Shown here piece by piece: positions 10,141 to 34,321 of a stretch of DNA of 64,000 nt; position 1 is the stretch's first letter, and each line of letters opens with the position of its first letter. The notes under the pieces are model-generated. The model ran no database searches and was not told the origin of the DNA. It worked only from the letters and a program-made list of their open reading frames with translations. The translations under genes and the position numbers were made by a program. The DNA comes from Tubulanus polymorphus (lineage: Eukaryota; Animalia; Nemertea), in contig NC_134030.1 in NCBI RefSeq assembly GCF_964204645.1, forward strand, positions 17,568,210 through 17,632,209, given 5' to 3'.

Positions 10141-10173
10141 AGTGAACCACAGCTAGATTTTCGTAGTATTTGA
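6574..10173 (+). pseudogene. pol: Gypsy pol (aspartic protease, RT, RNase H, integrase), disrupted
   Basis: ALIDTGAQVT; LDLKAGYW; MPFGLTNAPSTFQR then TAA at 7936; LVFIDDILIFS at ~7982; LHTDAAHDGLGA; HSDQGPAFES and GAVERFNGTL integrase core. Confidence 0.95.
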
Positions 10174-10199
10174 AAATGTTTCGTAGTATTTAGAAATGT

Positions 10200-12614: not shown

Positions 12615-12880
12615 TTTTGTGTGGGTTTAATTTTACTCTTAACTCAGTTCCACAGTTGTGTGAGTTTGATTGCATCCAGTTCCACAGTTGTGCCGGCTTA
12701 ATTTGATTCTGAACCCAGTTCCACAGAAGTGTAGATTTGATTTGACTCTGGATCCAGCTTCACTGTTGTGCGGGTTTGATCTGACTGAACCCAGTTCCAG
12801 AGTTTGGTGGGTTAAATTTGTCCCTGGATTCAGTTCCACAGTTGTATGAGTCTAATTTGTTTCTGAATTCAGTTCCACTG
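12615..12880. repeat. Degenerate tandem array of ~38-bp 'cagttccacagttgtgtgggtttaatttga' units
   Basis: Repeated cagttccac..tgtg..tttaattt units; same family as 17906-18395, 19495-19765 and the MITE at 25447. Confidence 0.75.
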
Positions 12881-14781
12881 GTGTTTAGAAGTTTTTTTGA
12901 AAACATAAATTTCAAAATTTCAGCCAACCATCAACGTCGATTACACCTGCACCAGAGCCGTCTGCTCCAGCAGCACCCGTAGCACCGGTAGCAGCACCTG
13001 CCGCACCTGCAGTGCCTGCCGCACCTGCCGTCTCTGCTCAGCTGCTCACAGCCGGTCGCATAACCGAATCGTTGATCGCGAATACGGTCACCACCGAGCT
13101 GCCCTCTGGTGTCAGGAAAGTTTAACAATGTGTTTCCATGCCTACATACCACACTTTAGTTGGTAGGCATGGAGACATATTGTTTAGCTTTCAAATCATG
13201 GAGTCACTTTTCTCTCGTGAACCCCTATTAATGATTAATGCAGACTTTCTGGTCGTAATAAGACTTCTATCAGGTATGTACCATCAAAACTTACTGAGCT
13301 AAGATGAAATTCTTAATAGGACCAGAAAGGACTGGCAGTCGACCTAAACCATTGTTTTCTAATCCAGTCATCACTGTATTGAGATATGGCAGAAAAGTCT
13401 TAGAGTGAAAGGGGCTTTAAAGAGAAAAGTGGTTAAACTTCAGTTGGTAGGCATCGAAACATATTGTTAAACTTTCAAATCATGGAGTCTCTTTTCTTTA
13501 TTCAACCCCTTTCAACGAGGACTTTTTGCAATCCTTCCATAAAGTGCAAAATGGACTAAAATCAATGTTTTAGGTCGACTACCAGTCCTTTCTGGTCCTA
13601 ATAAGACTTTTATCAGGTATGTGCCATCAAGGAAAGATAATAGTTTTTAGTGAAAAACCGAAAATTCGGATTCTTAATAGATTTTAAATAAAGTTTTGAT
13701 ATTTTTGAAAGATTTTTCGATCTTGTGGGATTTATATGTTAGACATAAGGAATATTTTGTTGCGACGATTAATTGCAAGTTTTTTTTCTAATCTAAGGAA
13801 ATGATGAAGAAAATTCTGACGGAACTCGATAAGTTGAGATAGTTGCACCAGCAACAGCTGTCCGAAATCCGGCACAATACCGAGTTGACACTCGCCGAGA
13901 TGCGGCAGAGTTTCGAGGCCGATAGACACGCGGCGCTCAGTGAATTACGCCGCACTCTGGAGGTCGAAGCCGCTAAAGCCGTCAACGAAGCCAAGAAAAA
14001 ACAATGGGTGAGTTTGGGGTGCTTGAACGCCCGGGTCTACTCAGCATCGATGATCAATCATCGGGGTAAAATCATTCATAGCATGAAGAGACCATGATTT
14101 CAGTCAGAAATAAGAGTGATGAATGATTCTTCAGACTTAACCCGTTCAGTGCGTCTACACCACAGTGTATTGATGTTATTAGTAATTAGATTGCTTTTAA
14201 GGGAGCATCTCAAAATTTCTATAGTTCCGTCAATTGGAATAACTGTCTAATTGGTTTTAACCACCCCACCCCCACCTTTGATTAGACACATGCCAAAGTT
14301 GGAACTATTGATTGTTCTAATCTAAGACCATAGACAAAGATAACGAGTGTTCGATCAACCTATTAAAACCCATTAAGCTCTAATAGACTTTATAAACAAA
14401 TTTAAATATATACAAAATACCAATAGACAGTTAAATCTACTGCTTGTATATTTGAAACTGTAATTCATTTCAATGTTATCTTTATTGAAACTGGGCCCAG
14501 CATTTTTGGGTATTAATTTGTCAGCATTGAAAGGGTTAAAGTCATGTCTTGATTCAAAGTTTTGGTTCAAGAAGATTTCTAGAAAGAACGCGGCAATTTC
14601 AGTAACAAGTTTGTGAGGTTTTATAAAGAGTTTTTTCTCTTCTCGTAACAGTGCGCGAACTGCGGTAAAGAGGCGATATTCTACTGTTATTGGAACACGA
14701 GTTACTGCGACTACCCGTGCCAACAGCAACACTGGTCGAAACACATGGCGACGTGTACGCAAGCTGTCAGCGAAACCGACC

Positions 14782-14957
<176 letters not shown>

Positions 14958-15181
14958 ACGACCACCGTGGTGCCAACTACAACGATTACCCAACAGCCGA
15001 TACAGGCTACGATATTGAACGGGCCGGACAAACCTCCGGATGGTTCAATACAGATTATAGGTCAACCTAGAGTAAGTTGTGAATAACTTCATCGGGTAAG
15101 ATACCTCGTACGCTCGGACAAGGGGAATCAACGAGGAATTAAAACTCACCGTTAGTAAATTAAGAAGATATTAAGTACCTA

Positions 15182-16226
15182 CCCAGCTAACAAAAAAACG
15201 TTCAAAGAACGTTATCTAAAAGTTTTTCACTAACGTTTTTACGTTAATGTTGAACGTTCGTGCAACGTTTGTAGAACGTTTTTTTGTAAATGTATTTTAA
15301 GGTTCACAGAACGTTTTTGATAACGTTGACTGAACGTTACTTCACAACCTCTCTGCAACCATTGAGCTTGATAAAAACGTTCCAATAACGTTCGTATGAC
15401 GTTACATTATAACCATGATGTCCTCTATCACGAGCTCGAATAAATCCCTTTCAACTAACTAATATTTGAATTATTTTACCTAACTTTTACTTTGTAACTA
15501 CGTATATATACATGTATAATATCGAAATTATTCACTCGTAAGTTAGTTCTCCAGTGCACCAGTCGTCGTCGTTACAGCGTAGCTGGCAGCCTTTGTGATT
15601 CCTGAAATAAAAGGGAAATGATACAGAAACTTTTATTTTCATGGTTGTGTTAAGCCTTGAAGTTCATTTCATCCATACATACAGGGATTGTTATGCTTGT
15701 TATTGGAGAACAACAGTTAGGTCATTTCATTGATATAAAACTCGACGAAAAGGTCTCTAACGTGGGTTTCTACATATAAAAGATTGTTTCAAAAACATTC
15801 TATCGGTAATTTTCCATATATTGAAAGTATCAAAATTTGTGGATTGAATAACGTACCTTAGTAAATAAACGATTTTTAAATCCCTTAAACACGCCGCTTA
15901 AAGCTGATTGATGAACAATGGCGAACACTTCCTGCTTTGATATGTCACGATATCCATCGGTTTCGAATCCCATATTTTTCTTTACTCCCGAAAGTTTGAA
16001 TCTTGCTTTCAAATGGTATTAAAATGTAGGAATCCACGTCCGGATTTGCTTAAAACGGACTATATTGATGATATCTGACTTAACTAATAATTTGCTGCAG
16101 GCTCTTGGATGATAACGTTTAGAAAAACCTTCAGAAAACGTTATCGCCTGAACGTTACATTATAAACTATCACACAACTTTCACGAACGTTTCCGAATGT
16201 TGTATGAACGTTGTGTGCTAGCTGGG
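15182..16226. mobile_element. Non-autonomous DNA transposon with TA target duplication
   Basis: ta|cccagctaac ... gctagctggg|ta termini; dense subterminal AACGTT motifs at both ends. Confidence 0.75.
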
Positions 16227-17905
16227 TAATTCAATGATTGAGATATGAAAAATTTGAAATTAAAGTCGGAAATGTCAGGCGCGGATCTAGGGCCTCATTT
16301 TTCAACATCAACTCCTTTTTTAAAATACATGCGCAGAGAACACGTTTTTGAATATAAACTTTTTCATAACAGTTCGATTTATATCATTTTCCTTTGAAAT
16401 TAAAAATTCAGGGTAACTTGAGATTTTGGGTGGGCTGCACATCCCCTGCACCCTCCCCTGGGTCCAGCCCTGCACTCGTGTATTGTCAAAATAATATACA
16501 CATTGTATACCCTTCAATTCACTGAAAGTCTACATTGATAACATTAATACACTTAAGGTGTAATTTTATGCTGATGCTTTAAGGATTTACATGGATATTA
16601 ATTAGTGTATAACCCATTGAGGGTATGCACCCCGTTCCCTGACTCTCCCAGTATTTATTACACCTGTTCTCCAGAGAAATCCTTTGTATCTATGTTCGTT
16701 AATTTCACTGTATGTGAACAGCAGTAAATAGAACAAGTATTTGCACTGCAGGATTTCATTGTGATTTTCTGAATAACGGCTTACCGTCAAGGGTGGATAC
16801 AGAGGACGACTTTTGAAGGTCTTTTTACACATTAAAAGGCATTGTCATTGTGAAAGCATTATTCGGAGGGATAATGGGAATTGAGGCATCGCTTTCGACA
16901 ATTTGTGGATGACTTCAATGCAATTACAGCATTTCCAAGTGGGAAACATTTCCTCTTCAAAGCAATATTGGGGGCCTGACCAACACGGCGTAAATTTAAA
17001 ATATTCCATGTTATATGGCGGTAAAAGTTTATTCAGAACAAGGCAACTGAAAATATTTGAAAGGCTTGTAAAAAAGCCTGCAAGACCTTTCGGGATCTGC
17101 ACCTGACACCGATAGCCCTCGTCTAATTCCTGGCTACGTGTTTTAGTGTTCGCGATCTGTAGCACCTAGTATATAGAAACGGTCCAGTGCACCGACAGCT
17201 TATAAAAAAAATCGACTTTTCATAATCTTGCGGTTTATTCCTGTTTCATTTTCTAGCATATTCTGTCTTACACTTCTTCACATTTCAGCCCCCGATACCC
17301 TATCCTCACGCGACAACCGGTGGCCCGCGGCCGCTGCCCGATTTCCGGCTGCCGCCCCCCGCGCCATCACGGGCCCGGCCAGGTATATAGAATTTAACCG
17401 GCATGTGAAATCATCTCTCATTTAGTCGAAATTCACGATTTCAGTTTTCGTTTCATTCGAGTTTCGTCGTAGAATTAGATTTGAAAAAATGTGATGCGTT
17501 TTAAAAACATTTTGTCGCATGTTTGTTTTTGTGCATTGTGAAAATGTAGTTGATTTTATTTTAAAGGTAGATTTTTCCCTAAATAATAAATTAGTGCTGT
17601 TTACTGGGGCCCTCAACCTAATTCCACAACAGTGAAAGGGTTAAATTTGACTCGAAAAATTGCGGTTAATCAATTTTCAATATTTTCAATTCGATATATT
17701 ACCTCAAAATGAAGGTGGCCCATTGCATTGAATGCGGTTCAGCTTCAGTTGAATCTAGTAACATACGATAACCGTAGAATGGCCGTGAGGTGCATCAATC
17801 TGCAGTCTTGCCCCTCCCTCTCGAACACTACTGAGTCATAATAATATGAAATAAAAATGAACTACAAGCATAAGACATTAGACATTTCAGCACCACTCAG
17901 GGCCT

Positions 17906-18395
17906 AGTTCCACAGTTGTGTAGGTTTAATTTAACTGTGAGCTCAGTTGCACAATTCCACAGTTGTGTGGGTTTAATTTAACTGTGAGCTCAGTTGCACA
18001 GTTCCACAGTTGTGTGGGTTTAATTTAACTGTGAGCTCAGTTGCACAGTTCCACAGTTGTGTGGGTTTAATTTAACTGTGAGCTCAGTTGCACAGTTCCA
18101 CAGTTGTGTGGGTTTAATTTAACTGTGAGCTCAGTTGCACAGTTCCACAGTTGTATGGGTTTAATTTAACTGTGAGCTCAGTTGCACAGTTCCACAGTTG
18201 TGTGGGTTTAATTTAACTGTGAGCTCAGTTGCACAGTTCCACAGTTGTATGGGTTTAATTTAACTGTGAGCTCAGTTGCACAGTTCCACAGTTGTGTGGG
18301 TTTAATTTAACTGTGAGCTCAGTTCCACAGTTGTGTGGGTTTAATTTAACTGTGAGCTTAGTTCCACATTTCCACAGTTGTGTGGATTTAATTTG
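17906..18395. repeat. 47-bp satellite, ~10 near-identical units
   Basis: Unit gttccacagttgtgtgggtttaatttaactgtgagctcagttgcaca. Confidence 0.95.
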
Positions 18396-18466
18396 ACGCA
18401 AAGTTTCCTTTTGCTACCATATCCCATAATCCCTAGACATGTAATTGGCATGTTTGTTTACATTTG

Positions 18467-19256
18467 GTGACCAGCTCCGGCTAATCACAAGCTAGGGTTA
18501 GGGATAGTTGTCATGCGCTTGGGGCTATTTGCATATATCAGGTGACCAGCTCCAGCCAATCAGGAGCTAGGGTTAGGGTTAGTGACCATGTGCTTGGGAC
18601 TATTTGCATAAATCAGGTGACCAGCTCCAGCCAATCAGAAGCTAGGGTTAGGGTTAGTGACCATGTGCTTGGGGCTATTTGCATAAATCAGGTGACCAGC
18701 TCCAGCCAATCAGAAGCTAGGGTTAGGGTTAGTGACCATGTGCTTGGGGCTATTTGCATAAATCAGGTGACCAGCTCCAGCCAATCAGAAGCTAGGGTTA
18801 GGGTTAGTGACCATGTGCTTGGGGCTATTTGCATAAATCAGGTGACCAGCTCCAGCCAATCAGAAGCTAGGGTTAGGGTTAGTAGTCATGCGCTTGGGGC
18901 TATTTGCATATATCAGGTGACCAGCTCAAGCCAATCAGGAGCTAGGGTTAGGGTTAGTAGTCATGCGCTTGGGGCTATTTGCATATATCAGGTAACCAGC
19001 TCCAGCCAATCACAAGCTAGGGTTAGGGTTAGTGACCAGGTGCTTGGGGCTATTTGCATATATCAGGTGACCAGCTCCAGCCAATCAGGTGCTAGGGTCA
19101 GGGTTAGTAGTCATGCGCTTGGGGCTATTTGCATATATCAGGTGACTAGCTCCAGCCAATCAGAAGCTAGGGTTAGGGTTAGTGACCATGTGCTTGGGGC
19201 TATTTGCATATATCAGGTGACCAGCTCCAGCCAATCAAGAGTTAGGGTTATGGTTA
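18467..19256. repeat. 75-bp satellite (~10.5 units) containing CCAAT, octamer and TTAGGG motifs
   Basis: Unit caggtgaccagctccagccaatcagaagctagggttagggttagtgaccatgtgcttggggctatttgcataaat; 25-aa periodicity in ORF 18542-19267. Confidence 0.95.
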
Positions 19257-19494
19257 GCTGTTTCTAGGTGGGAGGAGGTGTTTACATACAGTGAAATCAG
19301 TTCAATGACAGCTCCCCCTATTGTTAGTCAATCATAGATCTACAATTGACTGTGAATTGAATTCTATAGTTGTATGTTATATTGACATAGAACACATTGC
19401 TATAAGCATTATTATATCTGTTATAAGGTATAAAATAGATCGTTCAATTTCTATTTTACCAAAATTCACCAAATAAATATACAACCTATTTTGG

Positions 19495-19765
19495 GATCCA
19501 GTTCCACAGTTGTGTAGGTTTAATATGACTCTGGATCCAGTTCCATTGTGTGGGTTTAATTTGACTCCAGTTCAAATGAATCTGAATCCAGTTCCACAGG
19601 GGAATGGGTTAACTGTGACTCTGAATCCAGTTCTACAGTGGAATGGGTTAACTGTGACTCTGAATCCAGTTCCACAGTGGAATGGTTTAATTTGACTCTG
19701 AATCCAGTTCCACAGTCGTGCAGGTTAAATATGACTCTGGATCCAGTTGTGTGGATCTAACTTGA
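19495..19765. repeat. Degenerate ~39-bp tandem array of the cagttccacag family
   Basis: Repeated gactctgaatccagttccacag units. Confidence 0.75.
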
Positions 19766-20369
19766 CTGACATATATCAGCACACTTTCAAAAACTGATCG
19801 TCCACACTTCACTTGTGTTCAGAACTTCACCCGAGACATTTTTAATTTAAAATGAACTGAAGAATTGCCAAAAGCTCCAGAAATCATTACCATAAGTAGT
19901 AATTGCCAAAGAGGGTGGTTCCAGGGGTGGCTCCAGTCTGCTGATTGATAGAGAGTAAAAGCATATGTGTGTATACTGTATGTGTTTGTATATTTGTATA
20001 CCCGGTATGTGATTTGTAGCTAGGAGCATGTTCACTGTAGACGACTAACATCAAACCTGTTATTATCATATATATTTATGTCCGATTGTTTGTAGGTTAT
20101 TGGTAATCAAGTGACACAGTACGTACCTCAATTAATCACTGCCTCCACTTCAAATCCCACGATTCAAAATGCTGTTTCGTTGCCGTCTACCGGCGCTCAG
20201 GTACGTACACGTAACGCCGGAGCTCAACCGACCCCTCAGACAATCCACAGCCAACCAGGATTCAGAACCGGTGCAGGTTTACGGCTGCAGACAGCCCCCA
20301 CAGACAATCTGCAGCCTAGAACCACTTTCTCAGACAATCTACAGATTGTCTTATGGGTTTTAGGATCCA

Positions 20370-20710
20370 GACTTTAGATTGTCTGAAGGGTTGCAGGATC
20401 CAGGCTGCATATTGTCTGAAGGGCTGCAGGTTACAAGCTGTAGATTGTCTGAAGGGTAGCAGGTTACAGGCTGTAGATTGTCTGAGGGGTTGCAGGTTCC
20501 AGGCTGCATATTTTCTGAAGGGATGCAGATTTCAGACTTTAGATTGTCTGAAGGGATGCAGGATCCAGGCTGCAGATTGTCTGAGGGGTGCAGGTTACAG
20601 GCTGTAGATTGTCTGAAGGGGTGCAGGTTACAGGCTGTAGATTGTCTGAAGGGGTGCAAGTTACAGGCCGTAGTTTGTCTGAGGGGTTGCAGGTTCCAAG
20701 CCGTAGATTA
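20370..20710. repeat. ~33-bp minisatellite (agattgtctgaagggttgcagg...), with inverted copies at ~20300-20345
   Basis: 11-aa periodicity in the overlapping ORFs; cagacaatct upstream is the reverse complement of agattgtctg. Confidence 0.85.
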
Positions 20711-21062
20711 CAGTTTGGAAAAATTTACAGCATAGCGAAATTGTTGCTTGAAGTTATCTAGTAAATTGTTAAATTTGATACAGTAAAAGTAATTTTATCT
20801 ACAGTAATCTACAGTAAACTACATTTACATCTACAGTAAACTACATTTACATCTACAATTAGACACAGTTATTCACTGAGATTGTTAATCATTGAAATTT
20901 GCTTGTGGTTTCTTGAACAATCAAGTAACACCAACGATTTGTTGAGGAGAGAAAACTCGAAAGGTAAAATTCTCTCATGAAACGTGGATAAGATATTTGT
21001 TTTTACGAACCGAAAAATTTCACTCGAGATGAAATGATTCAAACGTTGTCTTCTATTTTTAG

Positions 21063-24000
21063 TTGTTGATAGAATTTATGGTGACGTGAAAAACAAAATG
21101 AAATCAATATCTACAGGTTTGTATTTTGATAATTTACTATCAATTCCTGCATTTAAATGTGAGATATATTTCCCGCTCACGTCACGTCACGTCATATCAC
21201 GTCGTAATTTTGAAGGTGATTAGTTTTATTTCATTCTTCATCGCAGATTGATTTATGTCTGAATTTACGTTCTACTTCTATTTGTGATTTCAGAGGAATT
21301 AAAGGAACGAGGAATCGTAGCTTATATAGAAGTGAGCAGAATTCCACAGTTTCGAGTTACCCGTAAACTCCTATAACACTATATAGACTCCTAACCTGTA
21401 TATTCCTAACACTAAACTCCAACCACTGAGACTGAACTAAATTCAACCATAGTTGAAGTAAACTGTATGATTTGACCTGTTTAGATCTACTCAATGTTTG
21501 TATATGAATTATTGTGTTTCTGTTTTTCAGTAAAAGATGAAATATCGAGTAAGTACTGATAACAACTTACACATTGTAGTCTAGGTAAATAGATTTACGA
21601 AATGATATGATAAGTTGTATTTTGATAGCTCCAATCCAAAAAAAATCCAATGAAACTGCTCAGAGTGCTTTACAGATGATGAAAATGCTTCCTTCAACAG
21701 GAAGGATTGGTAAAGAATAATATGTTTCCCTCTCCCTGCAGTAATCTATTGTGTTCATTCTGTTTCAGTGAATTACATCAAACCAATTATTGAAAACAGA
21801 ATCCCAGAATTTGAAGGTGAATATATTATGTTGACTGATTATTTTGCTTCTCATGTGGAATACACAGTTATTTCGCATATGGTCGACTGTATTTTGTAGG
21901 AGGATATTGTGACGCTATAGCAGCATAAATAGTTTACAACAGTTGACATCATGATATTTTCTAAATTAGTCTCTGGTCCTTATTAGGTACATTGTAACAT
22001 GTAAAATTTCAGATTCACTAGTGACTGTTTTAGAAGAGAAATGTAAAAAGGCTCGCAGTATGTGGTCATCAAAACACTGGGTATATGATATATCTGGAAG
22101 GTGTAAGTTCACGGTGAAATCAGTTTGTGATTTATAATAGAATTCTATTGTATAAAAACTTGTCTATTGTTTATTACATATAGTGTCTGTACTCAGTGAA
22201 CTTACCAGTGAAACTTCAAAGACAAACACAGGTTATTGGAAACAAGTCAAAGAATGTTTCGGTAAATAATAAATTCTTGTTTCACTGAACGTTTTATCAA
22301 ATGATCTGTTTTTAGGTTTTGAATTGTTTGTTCTGTTTTAATAGGAGATAAAATTAACAGTGAAACAAATACAACTAAACTAACAGATATAGGTGAATAT
22401 CAATACAATAACAACTTATTATTCAAATTAACAAAAAAATTTTGCGTTGAATTCATTGAAGATAAAATTTATTGATGTCATCAGATCATCAGAGGCATCT
22501 GTTTTGATTCAGAGCCAAGTTTAAGTGATGTTAAACTATGAATGACAGTTTGTATCGATGTGAAATAATCTTCAGACCGAGTTCATCGTAGATGATTAAA
22601 ATCAGTTGCGTCTAAACACAAAAACGTTTAAGCAACCGGTATCAAATCAAATATTATCAGATTTAAAATCAATCATTTATTTATTTATTTGTTTTCAGTT
22701 GATGAGTGTTTGGGTGAATGCACTAAAACAATAAGTGACAAGTGGCACCTTGGTGAGTACCCATCATGAGTACCTCTCATGACCACCCCCAATGAGTACC
22801 TCTCATGAGTACGTTGTTCTAATAACCACCAAGCTTCTTGAGTTCTGTTAAGTACGGAACGTGAATACAAATCTTAATTCGAGTACAATAAACTACTGGA
22901 AGACGAATGAGTAACAAAGATTAACTATCGAGATATGTGATCAGTGTAGTGGTGAGTACATGAGTACCAAATACAGACACTCAACTGAGTACCCAGTCCC
23001 GGTACCTGAATCGTTTAAAGACATTTAAATGATGTAATTTATTGATCAAGTTGAAACAAACTGCAACTGAACCAGTTTCAATGACAGTTTTTCTGTGAAC
23101 TTATGTTTATGTTTTGATATTTTTAGGTGATTTTAAGAAACGCAAAATGATCGTAGATACAGGTAAATATTGTGTAGCTCTGATATTCAGCCTAGTACTG
23201 CCCCCTGGTGACTGTATGAGATGTATCTATTCTGTTATTTGTATTATAGAAGTGATTGTTGATGAGATAAAACGCGACTATTTTCAAACTCCCGAATTTA
23301 GAAGTAAGTTTCCAATAAAATCAGAACCTGTTTTAACAACCAGAACTCAAATATTTATGTATTATTATTTATAGGTTCAGTTGAGACTGCAGTGAATGAA
23401 GCTATCAAGAATTCAGGTAATTGAATATTTCCAATTAATTAATTTCCAATTAATTCTTCAATTGAAATTTTGAATTGACTTCAGAATTGAGTTCAGTTTG
23501 GCTGAAAATGTATCTTTTTATTGTATCCACATATTTCATTTTTACAGATAAATCAAGACTTAACAATAAACCAAACTATGAAGCTGCAGGTTTGTAAAAC
23601 TCAAATTTCTGCTAATTTGACCTGACGAATTTCACAGATTAGAAAACAAATTCCCTGAGAACATTTTGAAATATGTCAGTTATTTCCATTTCCATGGTTT
23701 CTCGTCGTTACTAGAGGGGTAGTCACCCTTATTGATGACTTACCCCTAAGGGTAACTATGAAAGGCAGTCTATGAAACCAGGAAGATTATGTAATATTCT
23801 GTTCAGAATTAAATTTTATTATTTCAGTGAAGTGGATAGCTGATGAAATGAAAGGTAAATTGACTGATAATAAATACTCAGTTTCATTATGAGTTTGTGT
23901 TGATGTTTACTGAATCATTTCTAATTTCAGATTTCACGGTTATACCATCTGAATCTTATGGTAAGTAATATTGTTTATATCTATATATGTTATGTGGGCG

Positions 24001-24604
24001 CCTCATCTGTCAGCCAACTGGGCGGGAATTTGAGTAACAATTCACTAAAAATCCTGATGTTTTTTTCAGAGCGTAATGAATTTGCTAAACGTGCACGAGT
24101 AGAAGGTAATGAATAAATAATGTGTGTTAAAATTGATATTATCAATTTTGATAATGTTTTATAATATATTTTATTTCTATTTCAGTAATGAGAAAATCAA
24201 GAGAGTTGATAGATGAGATACGTGCTATAACAGATAAAAGTAATCAATATTGACTTCTATAAGCATCTTACTGACTCACTAATTCCATATTCATGAATTC
24301 ATGTTTCCACATTTATATATAGTCATGTAACATGTCTTATGGTTCCCAAACCGGAAATTTCAAAATAATATTTCCTGGCTCAAAATATTTGCGTTGTAAG
24401 TTGATAGACTTTCCTCTAATTCGGGAAATACATTTGAAATTCATTTTGCGCCTCAACTTTCTTCGGCGATCTTTCTTGAAAATCACCTTCATCAACCAAT
24501 CACCAGTAAAATGTTTATAGTTTGATGCATCAGTTTTTCGGGAATAATTTATTTTATTTTCAGACATATTAAGAAGGCGCGGTTTCCTGGTAGATGATGA
24601 ATAG
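21063..24604 (+). CDS. Micro-exon gene of unknown function; at least 16 symmetric phase-1 exons plus a terminal exon; 5' end unresolved
   Basis: AG/GT-bounded exons: 21063-21116, 21294-21331 (38 nt, off by one), 21531-21548, 21629-21709, 21769-21816, 22013-22102, 22184-22261, 22345-22392, 22699-22752, 23127-23162, 23250-23303, 23375-23416, 23548-23589, 23828-23854, 23931-23960, 24070-24105, 24186-24239, terminal 24564-24604 (TAG). AATAAA at ~24687. All are stop-free in phase 1. Confidence 0.85.
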
Positions 24605-25446
24605 TGCAAGTAAATCATACAGTCGTCACTTTCTGATTTAAACCATATGATCGAGGTTAAACTAGTTTTGAGGTTAAATGGTTTGAAATAAAATATATCG
24701 ATGAAATTGAGATGAAATTAAGTTCCGTTTTCTCCTGGTTTATGAGAAATCCAGTTTTAGAATCGTTTTCCACGAGAAACTACGTAGTTGATTGTTTAAA
24801 AAAAAGAGTCATAGAATTTAACCGAATCTCATAATCCGGATTTAACTGATCCTGATTAGGTTAATCCGGTATGGTTCTAATCTCTACTGAACAGTTTAAG
24901 AGATAAATGAGCAACAATGTTCAATAATACAATATCAAAACCCTTCACTTAGAATAAAAAGAGTCTGAATTGTTTCCTTAAGAAGATATTCATTCAACGT
25001 TTCAATCCTTTCAAACAAATTAAGAGAACTTATAGAATACCACAGTGAATATAAGTTAATGATTGGATGTCTAAAGCAGAACAAACTCTAAGGTGTTTGC
25101 AATTGTATTTGATGTTTGGTTTATATTGTATTCATTTATAGGGTATAGTAGAATGTTAAGAGATGATAGTCCTGGATCGATTGTTGATGATAGTAGTGAT
25201 AGTAGTGGTACTGACTGGAGGAGTGGTTATAATAGATCAAGCTACCGTTGATATTCTGTTGTCAATGTTTGACCTCACCTACTGTTTGACGCTGTATATT
25301 AATCGTTTTATTCTAGAATCTAGTGCGATTTTATACGAAAAGAATAAATGATAATGAGATGAAAAAAACGATTCAAATAAAATGTGTGTAATTTGTTTGA
25401 ATTGAGTCATTGTAGTCATATTTGTAAATTGATGAATAATTCATCA

Positions 25447-25555
25447 GGGTCCAGTTCCACTTGTGAGTTAAGATTTGAATCTTGAGTTAACTCATTGAAC
25501 GTGAACTAACTTTAACTCAGAGTTAACTCTAACTCACAACTGTGGAACTGGGTCC
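25447..25555. mobile_element. Short MITE
   Basis: ccagttccacttgtgagtta ... taactcacaactgtggaactgg inverted termini. Confidence 0.75.
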
Positions 25556-26524
25556 AGTGCAATTGTAATGACATTAAGTCAATCTTGAAATTTTCGGTAA
25601 AAAATGAAATATATATCGCTGGTTTTCCGCGTCTATAATCTGTTCATCCGCTAGTGAGAAATACTGTCTTTGTTATGCTGCTTTGAAGGTTCAGAACTCG
25701 ACCATCGTTTACTGTAGTTCTATTGATATATCAATTAATTGTTAGAAAATATCTTGAAGGTTAATTGATTTTCTTATTTCTTATGCTGTTATTTCTTGTA
25801 TAAAGATGAATTATATATTTCTCCTTTTTCCGCGTCTCTGTTAAACCTGTGAACGTTCAGATTTGATTATATGAGTTTATCAACCGGCTTCTGAAATGTG
25901 CTAAATATTAAGTGTTACTGCATTATAGTGTAAATGAAATACAGTGTTACTGAATTGTAGTGTAAATGAAATACAGTGTAATAACTTCACAATGACATGA
26001 TAAAAACACTAGTTCAGATTCTAAAATTTTAAAACTAAGGATTTATATAATCAAAAAGATACAACTTCCACAGAGATCTGGTGAAAAAGTCATGAAATGT
26101 AACTGATTAAGGTGAGTTTGCTTTAGTATTTAACTCCACTCCAGTCGGATCCGATCAACTCTGAGATAACCGTTCAACTCGGAGTTAACCGATCAACTCG
26201 GAGGTTACCGTTCAACTCAGAAATAACCGTTCAACTCGGAGATAACCGTTCAGGCGCGGTTCCACGCTGTCGCAATTGCCGCACGTGTGACAGTCGGAGC
26301 TGTTTAAAAAAATTAAAAAGTTGCCGAAATAAATTACAAGCATATGAAAAGACAAAGGTTTAGTTCATAGTGATCCTATAAATACTAGACTAATGCGCAA
26401 TTACCTTCTCACGTCGTAGATTTTGTCAAATTATATACGCTACGTTAGGTTAATGAAAATTATAATTTATTGAGGCTCTGAGAAGTCCACAGAACGCGTC
26501 TTCAGAAGCATAAATTAGCAAAAT

Positions 26525-26895
26525 GTATGGTCAACAGTATATTCACCTGACTGATCGCCAGTCACCACACCTGACTGATCACCAGTTACCACGCCTGACT
26601 GGTCAACAGTATACACACCTGACTAATCACCAGTCACCACACCTGACTGATCACCAGTTACCACGCCTGACTGGTCACCAGTTACCACGCCTGACTGGTC
26701 ACCAGTCACCACACCTGACTGATCACCAGTTACCACGCCTGACTGATCACCAGTTACCACGCCTGACTGGTCACCAGTCACCACACCTGACTGATCACCA
26801 GTTACCACGCCTGACTGGTCACCAGTCACCACGCCTGACTGGTCACCAGTCACCACACCTGACTGATCACCAGTTACCACGCCTGACTGGTCACC
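26525..26895. repeat. 24-bp minisatellite
   Basis: Unit cacctgactgatcaccagttacca and variants; 8-aa periodicity in the ORFs on both strands. Confidence 0.95.
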
Positions 26896-26957
26896 ACAGC
26901 GAAATGGTCACCACACTAACCAGACAAACTTAAATCCTCCGTCAGTCACCATTAATC

Positions 26958-27055
26958 TATGGTTTAGTGGTTAACGTGCTCGGCTGACATACTGAAGGTG
27001 TCAGGATCGAGTCCTGCTAGGGTTAGGGATGTACGCGAGCTAGGGTTAGGGTTAC
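26958..27055 (+). other. tRNA-derived (SINE-head-like) sequence followed by TTAGGG-like units
   Basis: A-box-like tggtttagtgg and B-box-like ggatcgagtcc; no intact acceptor stem. Confidence 0.45.
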
Positions 27056-27852
27056 TAAATAGCTAGGATTGGGATCACTGGCGACTCAGATGCTTACAGG
27101 TTACGCTATTGAAAAACTTTTTTTTATTTCTTAAGTGGGTTGATATACACATAAAACTTTGGTGACTCAAAACGTCCTCGATACTAAATAATTATTAAAA
27201 TGTCATTCATTTGTTCTCGGCCAATACGAGGTCACGTGATGCGCGCTAGACCAGTTTAAACCAGTTTCGCTATCTACTTCGATATGTAGATTTTGTACTA
27301 TTTTAGCCAATCAGTGACGAGTATGACTGATTATGCGTCCAATCACTGATGAGGATGTTTTAGGAGCTGGACCCGGTGTAAATAATATCAATTATTAAAT
27401 CAAATCAATTGCTATAAGATATTTAAGTTTCTGATACACATGAATATACCTTATTCAATCGAGGAATGAATTGAATTTAGTAGATACCCGCAGTTTATAG
27501 AGCGAAGATGGATTATAACAGTTGGACATGTGTAAGTTTACTGACCCCAATAGTTAGATAATGTAAAATGTAACGCATTGTTCGACCATTCTTGTCGTAC
27601 GTGGCGTTGTACCATAGATAGACCTCTTATACAACTGGTATGTCTTCAAACCTAGAGGTGCTCGCACATGTCTCCCGTAAAATTTAGACGAATATCACAT
27701 ATACTTGTGAATTACACATATTCTAAATAGTTCAAGATGTGACTGGTAAAGGTGAGTTTGTTGTAGTTTTGATAAAGTCAAACATTGAAATATTTGCCAC
27801 CAATTTTATGTTGATTTCTTCAACAATTTTCTGACCCAAATTTGAAGATTCT

Positions 27853-27942
27853 ATTACCCACTCCCGGCACGGGGAGGTAGTGACGAAAAATAACAATACG
27901 GGACTCAATCAAGGCCCCGTAATTGGAATGAGTACACTTTAA
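27853..27942 (+). rRNA. Isolated ~90-bp 18S rRNA fragment (pseudogenic)
   Basis: attacccactcccggcacggggaggtagtgacgaaaaataacaatacgggactc..ggccccgtaattggaatgagtacactttaa is conserved metazoan 18S sequence; the flanks are not rDNA. Confidence 0.9.
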
Positions 27943-29732
27943 TTGACGATTTGAAAATATTTTCTGAAAGCGGTGAAAACTCTGTGTTTTGTACAACTGT
28001 CAAAAGTCAACTCATTTTTTTAAATCTGTATTGTATGAATTTATTTGTAGGTTTCGCGTTTGGTCGCGATTTTGGATCCTTTTCCTGTATTTGGTTTTAA
28101 GCGCCATCCAAACCCGGTAGGTTCACATACATGTAAAGTCAAAAATGGAATTTTTATTGGCCTACGAATTTCTGGGAATTTCTTGCTTTTTCAGGATTTA
28201 TTAGGAATAGAATCGCGTTCAAACTAATTCAGGATTATATAGTATAAACTGTTCTCAAAAGCTGAACTGTTGTTAAAAACACAAGGATTCAAATTGACTC
28301 TGATTATGACTGGATTCATACATTACACACACAGGATTGGATAAACTGTAAGTAAGAAAAACATTAACGGCTGAAATTATGTTTTATAGGTTTAGTTATT
28401 TATTAGGAACTTACTCGGTGAGTTAGTAAGTTATAGAAATTAGTACAATATATATCAAATAAAATACGGTAGTTTAAATATAAATTTGGGTGCTATACGC
28501 GGCGAGGGACCTGGGAGATCTCAGGTGGACATCAGTTGGAGGAAGCAATTTGTTTATTTTGATGCCTAATGTCTTTATTTCAGGATCCCGTATTTCATGG
28601 GTTTTTTTCCAGGGTTTCTTTCTATATTTGCAGGTGTTTTTTTCTTTTTTTAGAATTTCCGTTTTTTCAAATTCATTGTTTTACTAGACAACGTCTATTA
28701 TGTACTTTTCTTGAAATAAACAGAACAATTTCAGGGTCATTGCTGAGACAAGACCCCAGAAAACTAGGCCACAGAGTACGTGTCTTCACCCCCAGCACAC
28801 AACAGAGTGGCCAGATTCAGGTGCGGCCTGTATGTTCTATTTCAGTGGGAAGAACAAGACCCCTAGTCACAGAAGATTGAACCTGAAGTTGAATGATGAA
28901 TAGGAGGCGCTGTAGGTAAGACGCGGTACCGGGGGGGGGGGGGTGAGGTCCAGTAACTCTGAGCGCTCAATCTCTCCTCATAAACACGTTATCCTTCGCC
29001 GGAACTTTTTTACTGGTGTAAGATTAGACAGGGCCCAGTCCATTTTAGAAATGGAAACTTGTGTAAGATTAGACCGGGCCCAGTCCATTTTAGAAATGGA
29101 AACTTGTGTAAGATTAGACCGGGTCCAGTCCTATCTTCTCTCCCTACAATGAAAAATGCCCAGCTCCAAATAAACACCACACAACAACCTTTATAAACTA
29201 GATGACGGTCTTTATTTTTAACAGAATATATTGGGCTTGAAGTGACTGTCCAAGCCCCAAGCGTACATTATTTTCAGTAGAATATAGTTCTTAGACTATA
29301 GTTCTAATATACTATTCTAGACTCTTAGAATATAGACCTTCTCCGTCCCGTACATGAATAAGCATTTGGTTAACAATAAAATAGACATGAAATACAAAAT
29401 TATATAAGCAATTGACTACAGCGAGCAAGACAAAAATAGTGAATATCAGATTATCTCGAAAAAAATCTCCATTTGTTGAGATTTATTGCCATGGCGACCG
29501 CAAAATATATACGATTACGATTACGATTACGATTACGATTTATTTACACTCCAACCATTTCCATGGTATATGGAGGAAAACTATTACACATGTATATACA
29601 AATATTTACAGAACAACACTAAAGTGATTAAAATTTAGAGAATGAAAACGTAACGAAATATATATATACATCAACTATTTACAATACTATATATACTATT
29701 ATATACATCAACTATTTACAATACTATATATA

Positions 29733-32700
29733 CTATTGAAGGGATCTATATACATCTAAGCCGGTCTTAATGAATTTAGCTAAGTTGACCGGTGGGTTTT
29801 TCAGAATATCAAGGGTATTAAAGGTATTCAAATTCAAAAAGTTTTTGCGTTGTTCGTTAAGTAAGGTACAGTCAAACAGAAAATGGGATTCGTCACCTAA
29901 AGTATTACAAGTGGGGCATATTCTATCGGCTCTGTCTAAATGAAGGTTTGAGAATTTGTTCACAGGTAAAATATAGGACCCGACCCTAAATTCAAATAAA
30001 CTAGTTCCTAAGTCATCACCAAGTTCTATTATATACTTCTCTAACCTAATATCATTTTTATATTGCCTAAAGTTAGTGTATATCGGATTAGTATTTATGG
30101 CAGATACAGTTTCTTGAAGGTGCTGGTCACGGAGTATCTGTTTTATTCGTTTTGAAAAAGATTTACTGTTAGTCATGAATTGCTGCGTCCAAATGCAGGA
30201 CAAACCACAGTCATCAAACGTTTTCTTTATATATGATAACCAAGGGCTCTTAAATTTATCCCTTAAAAATAAATTGAAAGATATTTTATAGAGTATTGAA
30301 TTAAGTTTGGTTTGCTTTCCAGATACTGTTTTCACCCAAAAGTTAATCATCCTGCGTCTAACATCTATATTCAAAGGGTAACGTCCTAGCTCTGATAAAA
30401 CTTGTAAGTTGCGAGAATATTTCGTCACTTTCATTAAGATTTTACAGAAGAAGCAATGAATATTTTCTAATAAATCAAGATTTTCATATCCCCAGATCTC
30501 ACACCTATACATGGCTATTGGAGCAACACACGTATCAAATAATTTAAACATAACATCTATGGGCAATTTCAAACGTCTGCCTTTTTGAACGATCGAAAAC
30601 ATAGCTCTGATAGCTTTATCGTAAAGATACTTTTTTGCCTTAGCAAAGTTACCATTCCAATTGAATTTTACTCCGAGATAAACATAATCTTCCACTACCT
30701 CTAACTCTTGATCACCAAACATAAATTTCGAAATCGTTTTTATCCGGGATTTACTTCGCGCAAATACTAGTACTTTAGTTTTCTCTGAGTTAACAGTGAG
30801 ACCATTAGCCGCGCAATATTCAAATAAGGTATCTAAGTGTAGCTGAAGAGATTTCTCATCCTCAGCAAGAATAACTGTATCATCTGCGTATAGTATTATG
30901 AATAAATTCAGTAAAGTATCAATATCCTGATCACGATTCAAATTTAGTTTTTCTATAAATGACAAAGTCGGTTTTCCACGATCAATGAAAAATTCTTCAA
31001 TGTCGTTTAAGAATAACGAAAAGAGGATAGGTGAGAGATTTTCGCCTTGTCTTAAGCCTCTATCAGCTGCAAAGTATTGTGACGTGCAACCATTTAATTC
31101 AACACATGATTTTATGGAGTTATACATATTTTTGACCACATTGAAAAAGTTTCCATTAACATTGTTAGCAATTAATTTTCGCCATAACTTTACCCTACAA
31201 ATCGAGTCGAAAGCTTTCTTAAAATCAACAAAGGCGCAAAAAAGTCTTCTTCCCTGACAAAGATACAGCTCTACGATTGTTTTAAGCGTGTAAATATGAT
31301 CAATGGTGGAATATTTCGATCTAAAGCCAGCCTGGGCTTCACTTATAATGTGATTCGTATCTAGAAATGTTGACAATCTTTGATTTAGGATACTTGTAAA
31401 TAATTTACCAAGACAGCTAACTAAGGTAATACCTCTATAATTATCAGGATTAGAGGGATCGCCATTCTTTTTGAAAATGGGTTTGATGACGCCTATAGAC
31501 CACATCTCTGGAACATATCCTGTTTTAAGAACTAAATTGAATAATTTTTGTAATATATCAACTAAAAACGGATACTGACTAACTCCCAACAGCTCATTCG
31601 TGATTCCATCAATGCCTGGGGCCTTATTGTTTTTGAGTAAAGAGATAGCCTTAATTACCTCATCACTGGTTATATCACTGTTCAAAATATAATTGTCATA
31701 GACAGGATGGTCACCCACGTCTGGGGGCTCATCACCGTCATCGGTTTCATTGTTAACATTATTCAAATCATTTAATCTCATAAAATGTTCAAGAAAAATA
31801 TCAATATCTATATTAGCCTCATTATTTTTTGTTCCGCTCGCAGAGTTTAGCATCGACCAATACTTTTTTGGGTTATTAATTTCGCATTCTCTCAATTCCT
31901 TAATAAATTCATCCTTTTGTTTCTTCTTATTTTCTCGGATGACCTTTTTATAGTTTTTAGACGAGTTCTTAAGGGATTCAAAATTGGAAGGGGTAGGGCA
32001 ACCCCTATATCTTTTTTTCATATAATTATATTTCTTCTGTGCATCTCGACAGTCCCTGCCAAACCATCTGTTGCGGACCGGTTTTTTGCAGTTATTACTT
32101 TTCCTACTTTTTCTATGGTACATCAAATTACACTCATCAGCACTTGATAATAAAGAAGATACAAATCTATCGGTAAATCCATTAATGTCATCTGGCGATT
32201 GATTTCCTAGATCTTGCAACCCGTCCAACAGTAACTTATCTAAATCATTATCTCGTAATCTTGATTCTACATTCAGGAAAAATTGATTTGATCTAGTACT
32301 GACCCACCTAATTGAAGTTTTAAAGTTCGCGTGTTCATTACCCCTTTCATTATCGCTAGCAATGGTGTCCCTAGAATTCGTATACACGCACAGATTAATA
32401 GGATTATGTCCATCAGATAATAATGGGTCAAAAGGCATTATTTCAAAGTCCTCAACATAACCAAACAGTTCTAAATCACACACAAAATAATCGATGACAC
32501 TAGTGTTCCTAAAAGTATAATTACCTGTCTGATCATTGCCACATCTGCCATTAAGGATAATTAGTGAATGGTTCTTACACAAATCTATTAGTTGATAGCC
32601 TGTATTATTCTTTCTTTTGTCCTGATTATTTCTAGTAGTGGGAACGCCTAAATTAATCAATGAGTCAACAATAGGGTCTATATATCATCTTGAATTATCT

Positions 32701-33200
32701 GATTATCAGGTTCCAAAAAGTCTGGCATACAAGCGGTGTGAGCATTAAAGTCACCAGAAATTAACACATTGAAATCATACTCAACTTTCAATTGCAATAA
32801 CTCTATTTCAATTTCTCTGATAGCTATTTCTGAATAATAACGACTATTTTCTGGAGGAATATAAATTACACCTAAAAGTACATGTTTGTCGCGATTAAAT
32901 AAATCTTTATCTAATAAATACCAAGATACAAACTGAGAGTCAGTCGAAATTGGTTTTATTTTATTTTTCATGAACTTCCTATATATGATACCGACGCCAC
33001 CTGATCCTTTTTTTGAAGATTTTTTCCTATTTTTAAAGTGCGCCATATGGGAGGCGGGCAAGCTACAACCTAAATTACCGTCTAAATCATCTAAGTGAGT
33101 TTCAGTTAGACATGTGATGTCATTATTGCTAATAAATTCACAGAATTCTGGGATATCGAGTTTAGCTATAAGGCCACATACATTCAGCGTAGAAAACTTT
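29733..33200 (-). CDS. LINE ORF2 (APE endonuclease, RT, C-terminal Cys/His motif); one frameshift at ~32670
   Basis: STLNVCGL..TCLTETH, SGDFNAHT, VIDYF, SDGHNPI; NYRGITL, QAGFR, FVDFKKAFD, GLRQGENLSPILF, LYADD; CPTC..GDESHFLFDC. Confidence 0.93.
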
Positions 33201-33535
33201 AATGATGATTTGATACAAGGAATTTCACTTATGTTTGCTGCGTTTGCTGTACTAGTTAAATTTTGCTTATTTAAATCAGAAGTGTTAATATTTCGCTTAT
33301 TTACATCAGAAATGAAATTGTTAGGAGTTACATCAGGTACATGATTGTTACTATTTACATCAGGGTATGTATCTACCGTATGAGAATTTACATGCGAGCC
33401 AACGATATCTGTATTTACATTTGGATAACTGTCACATAAATTTACACTATTTACAAATTCTATAACATAACAACAACTTCGAGATACAAGGACAGTCCGG
33501 TCTACGAATTGTACGCAAAGTCCCTCCGCTGGTTC

Positions 33536-34321
33536 CTAGTGGCTGTCCATCGGTACGCGGTCACGGTTTTCGCGGATAACGAGTTTGTCCCGTACAAAGA
33601 AAGCTTGTTTTCCGTTCGCTTTCGCAGCTCTCAGCTCGGGTAGCTTTTCGCGTCGTCTCGCCGCCCATTCCTCAGGCACCTGTTCATTCAGTCCTAAAGA
33701 CGAGCCCGGGAGATTTTTCGCAACTGAACGTACCAGTTCACGATCTTTGAAGAACTCGAATTTTGCAACAATTGGGCGCGGTTTTTTCTGTTCGTTTTTC
33801 CTTCGTCCAAGGCGATGTGTTCGCGCGAATTTGAATGAGTCCACGGTCGTCTTCGGTAACTTAAGGTCTTTCTCGCAAAAGCCTTTAATTAAGTCCTCGG
33901 TATTCTCATTTTCGGATTCCTCGACGCCGTAAAAGATCAAATTATCGCGCATGCTACGCCATTGCTGATCTAGGAGTAGTTCATGGTCCGATTTGATAAT
34001 TGCGTCCTGATCAGCGACGACTTTCTCTAAATCGCGAACTTTGCTTCTAAGTTGTTCGTTTTCACTCTTTAGTTGTAATACGTCCTGGTGGCAAAATTCA
34101 AGCGATTGTTTAACTTCGGTCATGTCCCTCTGCAAGTCGTCTAGAAGCTCTAATTTCGAAAGCTGGGAAAGAATCGCATCAAGTTTTGACGATATTCCAT
34201 TGTCTGCTTCCACACGTGATGCCGTTTCCTCAGTCGATTTATGATTCTGGCGATTCGGACGATTTGATGCTGCAGTCTTCTGCTTCTTGTTAGGGGGTGA
34301 AACACTTTGTCTTCCCGCCAT
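33536..34321 (-). CDS. LINE ORF1 (coiled coil + RRM-like RNA-binding domain)
   Basis: Heptad region, then SMRDNLIFYGVEE..RTHRLG..PRPIVAKF, typical of LINE ORF1p. Confidence 0.85.
   Translation of the reverse strand: MAGRQSVSPPNKKQKTAASNRPNRQNHKSTEETASRVEADNGISSKLDAILSQLSKLELLDDLQRDMTEVKQSLEFCHQDVLQLKSENEQLRSKVRDLEKVVADQDAIIKSDHELLLDQQWRSMRDNLIFYGVEESENENTEDLIKGFCEKDLKLPKTTVDSFKFARTHRLGRRKNEQKKPRPIVAKFEFFKDRELVRSVAKNLPGSSLGLNEQVPEEWAARRREKLPELRAAKANGKQAFFVRDKLVIRENRDRVPMDSH

What the first reader, a model, noticed from the sequence alone, without database searches (positions are those of the whole stretch)
20880..24692. Hidden micro-exon gene: a long run of symmetric phase-1 exons
Seen: sixteen internal exons of 18-90 nt (54,18,81,48,90,78,48,54,36,54,42,42,27,30,36,54), all multiples of 3, all open in the same phase, with pyrimidine-rich AG acceptors and GT donors. 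They are separated by short introns and end in ..NILRRRGFLVDDE* plus AATAAA. The exons are not repeats of each other. The ~290-aa product is charged and helical-looking, with no family I recognise. Known: this architecture defines schistosome micro-exon genes, where exon skipping yields variant secreted proteins. Inference: a combinatorial-splicing gene family in a different animal, possibly secreted, immune or toxin related. Caveats: 21294-21331 is 1 nt short (possible GG collapse), the candidate exon at 21900 lacks a GT, and no start codon was found (candidate exon ending 20963).
Basis: partly seen in the sequence, partly recalled or inferred. Interest (0 to 1): 0.85.

Follow-up and report, generated by a model that had tools for sequence, protein, structure and literature searches.

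The report
Truncated copy of receptor micro-exon tail
The run of tiny in-frame exons is real, but it is not a hidden secreted gene: it is a recently duplicated copy, cut off at the front, of the last 19 exons of a ribbon-worm cell-surface receptor gene whose long inner tail is built from such exons.

Summary
Observation confirmed. All 16 listed exons exist at the stated sizes, with AG/GT sites and one shared phase. At least 25 paralogs in this genome (Tubulanus polymorphus) keep the same exons in the same order. In a curated set of 172 clean paralog exons, every splice site is canonical. There are no stops in 2645 codons of the proposed frame, and every length change is a multiple of 3.

Interpretation only partly right. 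An exon-6 profile search found RefSeq proteins that splice these exons exactly. In them the run is the C-terminal block of a cytoplasmic tail of about 900 residues. The full proteins have a signal peptide, an Ig-like ectodomain and one membrane helix. A shorter version of the block sits in front of a NACHT domain in two models.

The window holds only exons E00-E18. Homology to a 99% twin 486 kb away starts inside an intron at 20779. E00 has lost its acceptor and E02 carries a 2-nt insertion. No start codon, signal peptide or membrane segment is present.

RefSeq isoforms of paralogs do skip single tail exons, including E00 and E02. It is not a schistosome-type micro-exon gene. No RNA data could be laid on the locus.

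The scan already reported this family on other DNA (s1-529109, s1-529112).

The parts
20779..29500 (.). Segmental duplication shared with C6:18.0756-18.0843 Mb (the twin). The left breakpoint at about 20779 lies inside the intron upstream of E00. The right end was not reached (a transposon starts near 29511).
   Evidence: 99.04% identity over 20779-26200 to L002. 98% identity over 26000-29500. No match for window 9000-20800 near 18.07 Mb was listed, though only the best candidates are scored.
20797..20857 (+). 22-bp tandem repeat that fills the intron upstream of E00 in every paralog examined.
20919..20963 (+). E00, a 45-nt phase 1-1 family exon. The GT donor is kept, but AC stands where paralogs have AG, in both the window and the twin.
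   Evidence: Alignment of 16 copies. The exon is translated in RefSeq P0002 and P0015 and is skipped in isoforms P0007 and P0028.
21063..21116 (+). E01, 54 nt. The in-frame ATG at 21098-21100 is specific to the window; the twin has ATA.
   Evidence: Contigs of runs X1 and X2 read only A at 21100.
21294..21331 (+). E02, 38 nt here against 36 nt in the family, because of a TA insertion near its 3' end. This shifts the frame unless the second AG (exon start 21296) is used or the exon is skipped.
   Evidence: E02 is a skipped cassette in RefSeq isoforms of two paralog genes.
21531..21548 (+). E03, 18 nt.
21629..21709 (+). E04, 81 nt. Intact in only 4 copies, degenerate in the others, and absent from all RefSeq proteins retrieved.
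21769..21816 (+). E05, 48 nt.
22013..22102 (+). E06, 90 nt. This exon was used for the profile search.
22184..22261 (+). E07, 78 nt.
22345..22392 (+). E08, 48 nt.
22699..22752 (+). E09, 54 nt.
23127..23162 (+). E10, 36 nt. It is the last exon of the repeated E00-E10 unit.
23250..23303 (+). E11, 54 nt.
23375..23416 (+). E12, 42 nt.
23548..23589 (+). E13, 42 nt.
23828..23854 (+). E14, 27 nt.
23931..23960 (+). E15, 30 nt.
24070..24105 (+). E16, 36 nt.
24186..24239 (+). E17, 54 nt.
24564..24604 (+). E18, the terminal coding exon, with stop TAG at 24602-24604. AATAAA follows at 24686-24691.
   Evidence: It has the same ending as RefSeq P0002.

Best explanation
The window holds the last 19 exons (E00-E18) of a member of a gene family seen so far only in Tubulanus polymorphus.

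Full-length members encode type I membrane proteins. They have a signal peptide, an Ig-like ectodomain of about 450 residues and one membrane helix. Their helical, charged cytoplasmic tail of about 700-1300 residues is built entirely from short symmetric phase-1 exons.

Because every tail exon starts and ends in the same phase, exons or blocks of exons can be duplicated, lost, skipped or moved without breaking the frame. The family shows all four.
- Many genes carry the E00-E10 unit two or three times.
- E04 comes and goes between copies.
- RefSeq isoforms skip single exons.
- A shortened block (E02-E09 plus an E18-like exon) sits directly in front of a NACHT domain in two gene models.

The window copy arose by a very recent segmental duplication of at least 8.7 kb. 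The source is a copy 486 kb away that still has upstream tail exons. The break lies in the intron before E00. The window copy therefore has no ectodomain, no membrane segment, no upstream tail and no conserved start codon.

Its open frames reflect its youth (99% identity to the twin), not selection on this copy. It is most likely an inert gene fragment.

Shown: the exon structure, family membership, truncation and lesions. Inferred: the cytoplasmic location, lack of function of this copy, and any signalling role of the tail.
For: Exon reality and frame.

Family size: at least 25 collinear copies, mostly in tandem arrays at C6 21.69-22.84 Mb.

Database proteins: the E06 profile search of 1.84 billion proteins found four real hits, all RefSeq T. 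polymorphus. P0002 reproduces my exon borders for copy L014 residue for residue.

Architecture: hydrophobic N-terminus, Ig_2 or C2-set_2 hits in 7 and 4 of 15 members, and a single membrane-like segment near residue 451-471 followed by basic residues.

Inter-unit exons are also phase 1.

Truncation: tblastn of four family proteins finds only E00-E18 in the window. The twin keeps five upstream tail exons, and homology starts at 20779.

Lesions: AC at the E00 acceptor and a TA insertion in E02.

Neutral divergence from the twin: 4 of 869 exon differences against 29 of 4552 non-exon differences.

Cassette skipping in paralog isoforms.

NACHT fusion collinear in the genome.
Against: No RNA data could be laid on this locus, so expression is untested.

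A first exon needs no acceptor, so a transcript starting at E00 is possible. The window has an in-frame ATG in E01, and the second AG of E02 restores an open 36-nt exon. A protein of about 277 residues is therefore formally possible.

Tail-only RefSeq models exist in the family (P0002 at 647 aa, P0035 at 929 aa).

Both lesions are shared with the twin and hit exactly the two exons that paralogs skip, so they need not disable anything.

I could not see the RefSeq annotation of this locus itself.
Confidence: 0.72

Rival explanations
1. It is a stand-alone expressed gene. A transcript starts at or before E00 and is translated from the ATG in E01. It uses the second AG of E02 or skips E02. The product is a soluble tail-only protein of about 265-277 residues that could act as an adaptor or decoy for the receptor family.
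For: All exons are open with intact donors and acceptors from E01 on. There is an in-frame ATG at 21098. The second AG gives an open 36-nt E02. A stop plus AATAAA is present. Tail-only models exist among paralogs.
Against: The ATG is not conserved in any paralog or in the twin. Contigs of two DNA runs read only A at 21100. There is no RNA evidence. 99% identity to the twin explains the intact frames without selection. No retrieved protein came close to the window's exons (best 78% identity), although the searches covered only proteins of 356-2002 aa.
Confidence: 0.15
2. It is a schistosome-type micro-exon gene: a small secreted protein diversified by combinatorial exon skipping.
For: The exons are symmetric. 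Paralog isoforms skip cassettes. dN/dS is about 1.
Against: There is no signal peptide or start codon. The homologous block is C-terminal to the membrane helix in full-length paralogs. The median exon is 48 nt. Only about 22% of the internal coding length (183 of 828 nt) lies in exons of 36 nt or less. MEG proteins are at most 189 residues, have a signal peptide and are specific to Schistosomatidae (bioRxiv 10.1101/2023.06.21.545858).
Confidence: 0.02
3. The exons are spliced onto unrelated upstream exons lying beyond the satellite block at 18000-20700, forming a chimeric gene.
For: E01 keeps a good acceptor. Duplicated 3' gene fragments are sometimes captured by upstream promoters (general knowledge).
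Against: The 11.8 kb upstream is satellite and transposon sequence. No candidate exons were seen there, but I did not search it in detail.
Confidence: 0.08

Closest known systems
T. polymorphus RefSeq loci LOC141906786, LOC141906794, LOC141906884, LOC141906974, LOC141907883 and others ('uncharacterized protein')
   Same: Same exons in the same order and phase. Identity of the window's exon peptides to these proteins is about 50-78%. The stop context is the same as in LOC141906786.
   Different: The window copy lacks everything upstream of E00 (ectodomain, membrane helix, first half of the tail). It has an AC at the E00 acceptor and a 2-nt insertion in E02. It includes an apparently intact E04 that no RefSeq model uses.
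Schistosome micro-exon genes (MEGs)
   Same: A run of symmetric exons whose lengths are multiples of 3. Exon skipping keeps the frame. Evolution is fast, and the family is multi-copy and lineage-specific.
   Different: MEGs encode small secreted proteins with a signal peptide, and their most common exon length is 15 bp. Here the exons are 18-90 nt and encode part of a cytoplasmic tail of a large receptor. No sequence similarity was found, and the phylum is different.
Receptor tails and NLR N-termini that share one signalling domain (TIR in Toll-like receptors and plant NLRs; death-fold domains in TNF-family receptors and animal NLRs). From general knowledge.
   Same: The same block is found at the cytoplasmic end of membrane receptors and directly in front of a NACHT domain.
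   Different: No TIR, death-fold or other Pfam domain is detected. The AlphaFold model has mean pLDDT 38. Homotypic binding is not tested.
Unprocessed, duplicated pseudogenes or gene fragments
   Same: The copy keeps its introns, is truncated at a duplication breakpoint and is nearly identical to its parent.
   Different: There are no disabling mutations of its own yet. The two lesions are inherited from the parent copy.

Membership tests
T. polymorphus Ig-receptor family with micro-exon tail | Collinear set of tail exons E00-E18 with conserved lengths, phase 1-1 and splice sites | tested here: met
   RefSeq P0002 matches the exon borders.
T. polymorphus Ig-receptor family with micro-exon tail | Signal peptide, Ig-like ectodomain and single membrane helix encoded upstream in the same gene | tested here: not met
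   tblastn of P0001-P0004 finds none in the window. Homology to the twin starts at 20779. The window therefore holds a fragment of a member, not a whole member.
Schistosome micro-exon genes | Internal exons symmetric, with lengths that are multiples of 3 | tested here: met
Schistosome micro-exon genes | Most of the coding sequence in very short exons (most commonly 15 bp) and a protein under about 190 residues | tested here: not met
   The median exon is 48 nt, and 6 of 17 internal exons are 36 nt or shorter. The family proteins are 647-2601 residues.
Schistosome micro-exon genes | N-terminal signal peptide and a secreted product | tested here: not met
   No start codon or hydrophobic N-terminus is present. 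The block is C-terminal to the membrane helix in paralogs.
Schistosome micro-exon genes | Protein variants made by exon skipping | tested here: inconclusive
   Seen only in RefSeq isoform models of paralogs. No RNA reads were available for this locus.
NLR (NACHT-LRR) genes | NACHT domain in the same gene | tested here: not met
   E18 ends in a stop. The only NACHT match in the window is at 34958-37753 on the opposite strand. Two paralog models do fuse the block to NACHT.
Duplicated gene fragment (unprocessed pseudogene) | Truncated relative to a near-identical parent copy, with introns retained | tested here: met
Duplicated gene fragment (unprocessed pseudogene) | Not expressed or not translated | not testable with these tools
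   Only DNA-type runs were offered, and no GT..AG joints were seen.

The most novel reading that the evidence does not exclude
The truncated copy is not dead. It is transcribed from a new start near E00 and makes a soluble tail-only protein that binds the tails of the membrane receptors, or the matching N-terminal block of the NACHT proteins. It would act as an adaptor or decoy in a ribbon-worm-specific Ig-receptor-to-NLR signalling route. More broadly, symmetric micro-exon blocks would serve as movable signalling cassettes that are copied next to, or into, immune genes.
Probability: 0.1. Interest if true: 0.6.

Novelty: new member of a known kind. Interest (0 to 1): 0.4.

Why it matters
For this locus the result is sobering. 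A perfect-looking run of open, phase-matched exons with a stop and a poly(A) signal can be a young gene fragment. The missing start codon was the clue.

For the family the architecture is unusual. A cytoplasmic tail of many hundreds of residues is built only from symmetric short exons. It is expanded to two dozen or more tandem genes and evolves with dN/dS near 1. It shares a block with NACHT proteins. No paper found here describes this family. RefSeq lists the genes only as uncharacterized. The family gives a concrete case of how exon-phase symmetry lets tails be duplicated, trimmed and re-attached.

The window copy adds one data point. A block has been moved 486 kb by segmental duplication, with the break in a repeat-filled intron.

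Tried and rejected
RNA evidence. The one run search offered only two runs of unknown kind. Their contigs cover the introns and show no GT..AG joints.

Searches that found nothing.
- Pfam on single exons gave no hits.
- Pfam on the tail-only protein P0002 gave no hits.
- PDB sequence search gave nothing at E up to 1.
- ESM Atlas gave best scores of 0.79 and TM below 0.4, which is noise level.

Structure. AlphaFold2 of P0002 with a 15-row alignment gave mean pLDDT 38 and pTM 0.19. I ran no fold search on it. I ran no complex prediction, because I claim no binding and such a model would not be informative.

Blocked steps.

Candidates rejected.
- P0005 from the profile search is a spurious repeat protein.
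- The candidate exon at 21900 has no paralog support.
- No start codon works in E03 or E04. The E03 ATG is out of frame, and E04 is degenerate in most copies.
- Internal repeats within one unit were not seen: blastp of P0002 against itself found none at E below 0.01.

Joined step left out. It was computed only inside scripts to check the frame. Searches were exon by exon by reference, and full-length work used database proteins.
Full report
**1. What is in the sequence**

All are in one frame, with introns falling after the first base of a codon on both sides (phase 1-1). All have canonical AG and GT sites. A last exon (24564-24604) ends in TAG, and AATAAA lies 82 nt downstream. Introns are 59-374 nt. 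The exon coordinates are listed under parts.

**2. Is it more than chance?**

A DNA search of the window's own genome found a 99% copy 486 kb away (C6:18,075,664-18,079,501). It also found more than 170 further matching pieces at 68-95% identity. These group into at least 25 collinear copies. Most are in same-strand tandem arrays at C6 21.69-22.11 Mb and 22.77-22.84 Mb, near the end of the 23.04-Mb contig. Further copies lie on C9 and C19.

I fetched 20 of these regions and projected every exon onto them. For the clean set I used E01, E03 and E05-E17 from 15 copies, 172 exons in all. I left out E02, E04 and a few flagged cases such as a 40-nt E10 in L015.

In that set:
- All 172 acceptors are AG and all 172 donors are GT.
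- The proposed frame has 0 stops in 2645 codons. The other two frames have 258 and 398, and about 206 would be expected from intron stop density.
- Every exon length variant is a multiple of three: 48/51, 87/90/105, 42/54, 30/36/48 and 30/33.

Exons are more alike than the neighbouring introns, with dN and dS near 0.13 against intron p-distance of 0.22. Substitutions fall almost evenly on the three codon positions, and the median dN/dS over 105 pairs is 0.96. The frame and the splice sites are under selection in the family. The residues are hardly constrained, or synonymous sites are also constrained, as can happen in very short exons.

**3.

(a) Exon 21294-21331. In all 17 paralogs aligned (every copy except the twin) this exon is 36 nt from the first AG and open in phase 1. 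The window and its twin have an extra TA near the 3' end, giving 38 nt. Using the second AG of the CAGAG acceptor gives a 36-nt exon that is open here but read in another frame. Skipping the exon also keeps the frame.

(b) The candidate exon at 21900 has no counterpart in any copy.

(c) The candidate exon ending at 20963 is a conserved 45-nt phase 1-1 exon (E00, 20919-20963) with a conserved donor. In the window and its twin the acceptor AG reads AC.

E04 (81 nt) has intact sites and frame only in the window, the twin, L014 and L015. In the other copies it carries frame-breaking indels, a lost donor or large deletions.

No in-frame ATG is conserved in E00-E05. The ATG in E01 (21098) is private to the window, and the twin reads ATA. 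The contigs of both DNA runs read only A at 21100.

**4. What the exons belong to**

I sent no joined peptide of the window model to any search or fold tool. A joined translation was made only inside scripts to check the frame.

A profile of E06 from 18 copies (alignment A1) was run against 1.84 billion representative proteins. It found four real hits:
- P0001 (1549 aa)
- P0002 (647 aa)
- P0003 (1144 aa)
- P0004 (1217 aa)

All are RefSeq 'uncharacterized protein' entries of Tubulanus polymorphus, a ribbon worm. This also names the organism.

P0002 is the product of copy L014. From E00 to the stop it is identical to my projected exons, with E02 read from the first AG and E04 left out. That is independent support for the exon borders, in so far as RefSeq models rest on transcript data. 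I could not check that here.

**5. Architecture of the family**

P0001, P0003 and the further members found share one layout:
- They begin with a hydrophobic leader.
- An ectodomain of about 450 residues follows. It gives weak Ig_2, C2-set_2, I-set or V-set hits in 7, 4, 1 and 1 members. Most are just under Pfam's cut-offs.
- A single hydrophobic segment lies near residues 451-471 and is followed by basic residues.
- Then comes a long charged tail.

By the positive-inside rule the tail is cytoplasmic. This is an inference.

The micro-exon run of the finding is the C-terminal block of that tail. In most members the E00-E10 unit, together with about six exons before it, occurs two or three times before E11-E18. 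This explains the alternation of short units (E01-E10) and long units (E01-E18) in the arrays. The exons between units are also phase 1-1, at roughly 18, 57, 78, 51, 84, 84 and 45 nt.

Every database homologue is from T. polymorphus. The word-based searches have limited reach, and the exhaustive one used only a 30-position profile.

**6. Link to NLRs**

P0004 has a block equivalent to E02-E09 plus an E18-like exon without a stop. A NACHT domain follows directly (Pfam E = 8e-17). These pieces lie collinear within 5.5 kb on contig C19. P0025 (2393 aa) reads Ig-like ectodomain, membrane segment, tail, the same block, then NACHT and an NLRC4-type helical domain.

The tail block is therefore shared between receptor tails and the N-terminal position of NLRs. 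That is the place where known NLRs carry their signalling domain (general knowledge). No known domain is detected in the block:
- Pfam found none.
- PDB sequences gave none.
- ESM Atlas scored at noise level.
- The AlphaFold2 model is helical but unreliable, with mean pLDDT 38.

A homotypic signalling role is my best guess at function, with perhaps 35% confidence. It is untested.

**7. Exon skipping**

For 12 family genes the clusters hold two to four RefSeq isoforms. Pairwise comparison shows exact removal of whole micro-exons:
- E00 in two genes.
- E02 in two genes.
- E09 plus E10 in one gene.
- An 18-nt exon.
- Two different 45-nt exons.
- The exon that carries the membrane helix, in three genes.
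- Some 1-7 residue shifts at alternative splice sites.

However, these are a few events per gene in automatic models, not shown combinatorial diversity. Most of the variety lies between gene copies.

**8. What the window copy is**

tblastn of P0001-P0004 against the whole window finds only E00-E18. The one exception is an unrelated NACHT-LRR match at 34958-37753 on the minus strand. The twin (L002) still has five tail exons upstream of E00. Window and twin are 99.04% identical from 20779 to 26200 and 98% identical on to at least 29500.

To the left of 20779 the window has satellite arrays of 33-, 39-, 75- and 47-bp units and transposon pieces. The search listed none of these near 18.07 Mb, although it scores only the best candidates. 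The break lies in the intron that is filled with a 22-bp tandem repeat in all copies. The two copies differ at 4 of 869 exon positions and 29 of 4552 other positions, so there is no sign of selection since the duplication.

The window locus is therefore a young, 5'-truncated duplicate of a tail block. Its two lesions, the AC at the E00 acceptor and the TA insertion in E02, are inherited from the parent copy. They hit exactly the two exons that paralogs skip, so the parent may still work. The fragment has no conserved way to start translation.

I put 0.72 on an inert fragment and 0.15 on an expressed tail-only protein. I put 0.08 on capture by upstream exons and 0.02 on a schistosome-type secreted gene.

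**9. Comparison with known systems**

With schistosome MEGs it shares exon symmetry, skipping and fast evolution. It fails the defining features of a signal peptide, a small secreted product and dominance of very short exons (definition from bioRxiv 10.1101/2023.06.21.545858). It is a fragment of a member of the RefSeq-annotated but undescribed T. polymorphus receptor family. Literature searches for micro-exon genes in nemerteans and for this species' genome found no description.

**10. Earlier notes of this scan**

After my own analysis I found two notes on the same family 4.06 and 4.28 Mb further along this contig (s1-529109 and s1-529112). They describe an Ig receptor with a tail of about 47 symmetric micro-exons, about two dozen copies and NACHT-linked sister genes. 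My results agree with them. The scan has thus found this family before on other DNA.

Note s1-526928 called the genome a ribbon worm and described the NLR at 34916-40406. The protein names confirm the former, and one search confirms a NACHT-LRR match there.

**11. Limits**

- There is no RNA evidence for this locus.
- I could not fetch more of the twin's surroundings.
- I could not see the RefSeq annotation of either copy.
- The clean exon set in point 2 was chosen by hand.

Noticed in passing
Protein P0025 (LOC141906708) and P0004 (LOC141914492); locus L032:1-5500 (-): Two gene models put the tail block directly before a NACHT domain. P0025 reads Ig-like ectodomain, membrane helix, tail, NACHT: a membrane-anchored NLR if the model is real and not a read-through of neighbouring genes. 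The P0004 exons are collinear on contig C19.
   Followed up: partly
window 20797-20857 and the same intron in L002, L013-L027: A 22-bp tandem repeat (each unit contains CTACAG) fills the intron before E00 in every copy. The duplication breakpoint of the window copy lies at its edge.
   Followed up: partly
window 29511-34738: A transposable element of about 5.2 kb has more than 25 copies at 98-100% identity on many contigs, so it was probably active recently. It lies between the tail fragment and the NLR gene.
   Followed up: no
window 34958-37753 (-): The NACHT-LRR coding region is 59% identical to residues 306-1214 of P0004. It is on the opposite strand, convergent with the tail fragment.
   Followed up: partly
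window 18000-20709: Four different minisatellite arrays (47-, 75-, 39- and 33-bp units) lie directly upstream of the fragment. A similar block lies at C8:147.9-155.0 kb (88-95% identity).
   Followed up: no
RefSeq isoforms P0013, P0030, P0036: In three family genes an isoform drops exactly the exon that encodes the membrane helix. That would turn the receptor into a soluble protein.
   Followed up: partly
window 26546-26896: A 24/72-bp tandem repeat gives long open frames on both strands. These are repeat artefacts, not genes.
   Followed up: no
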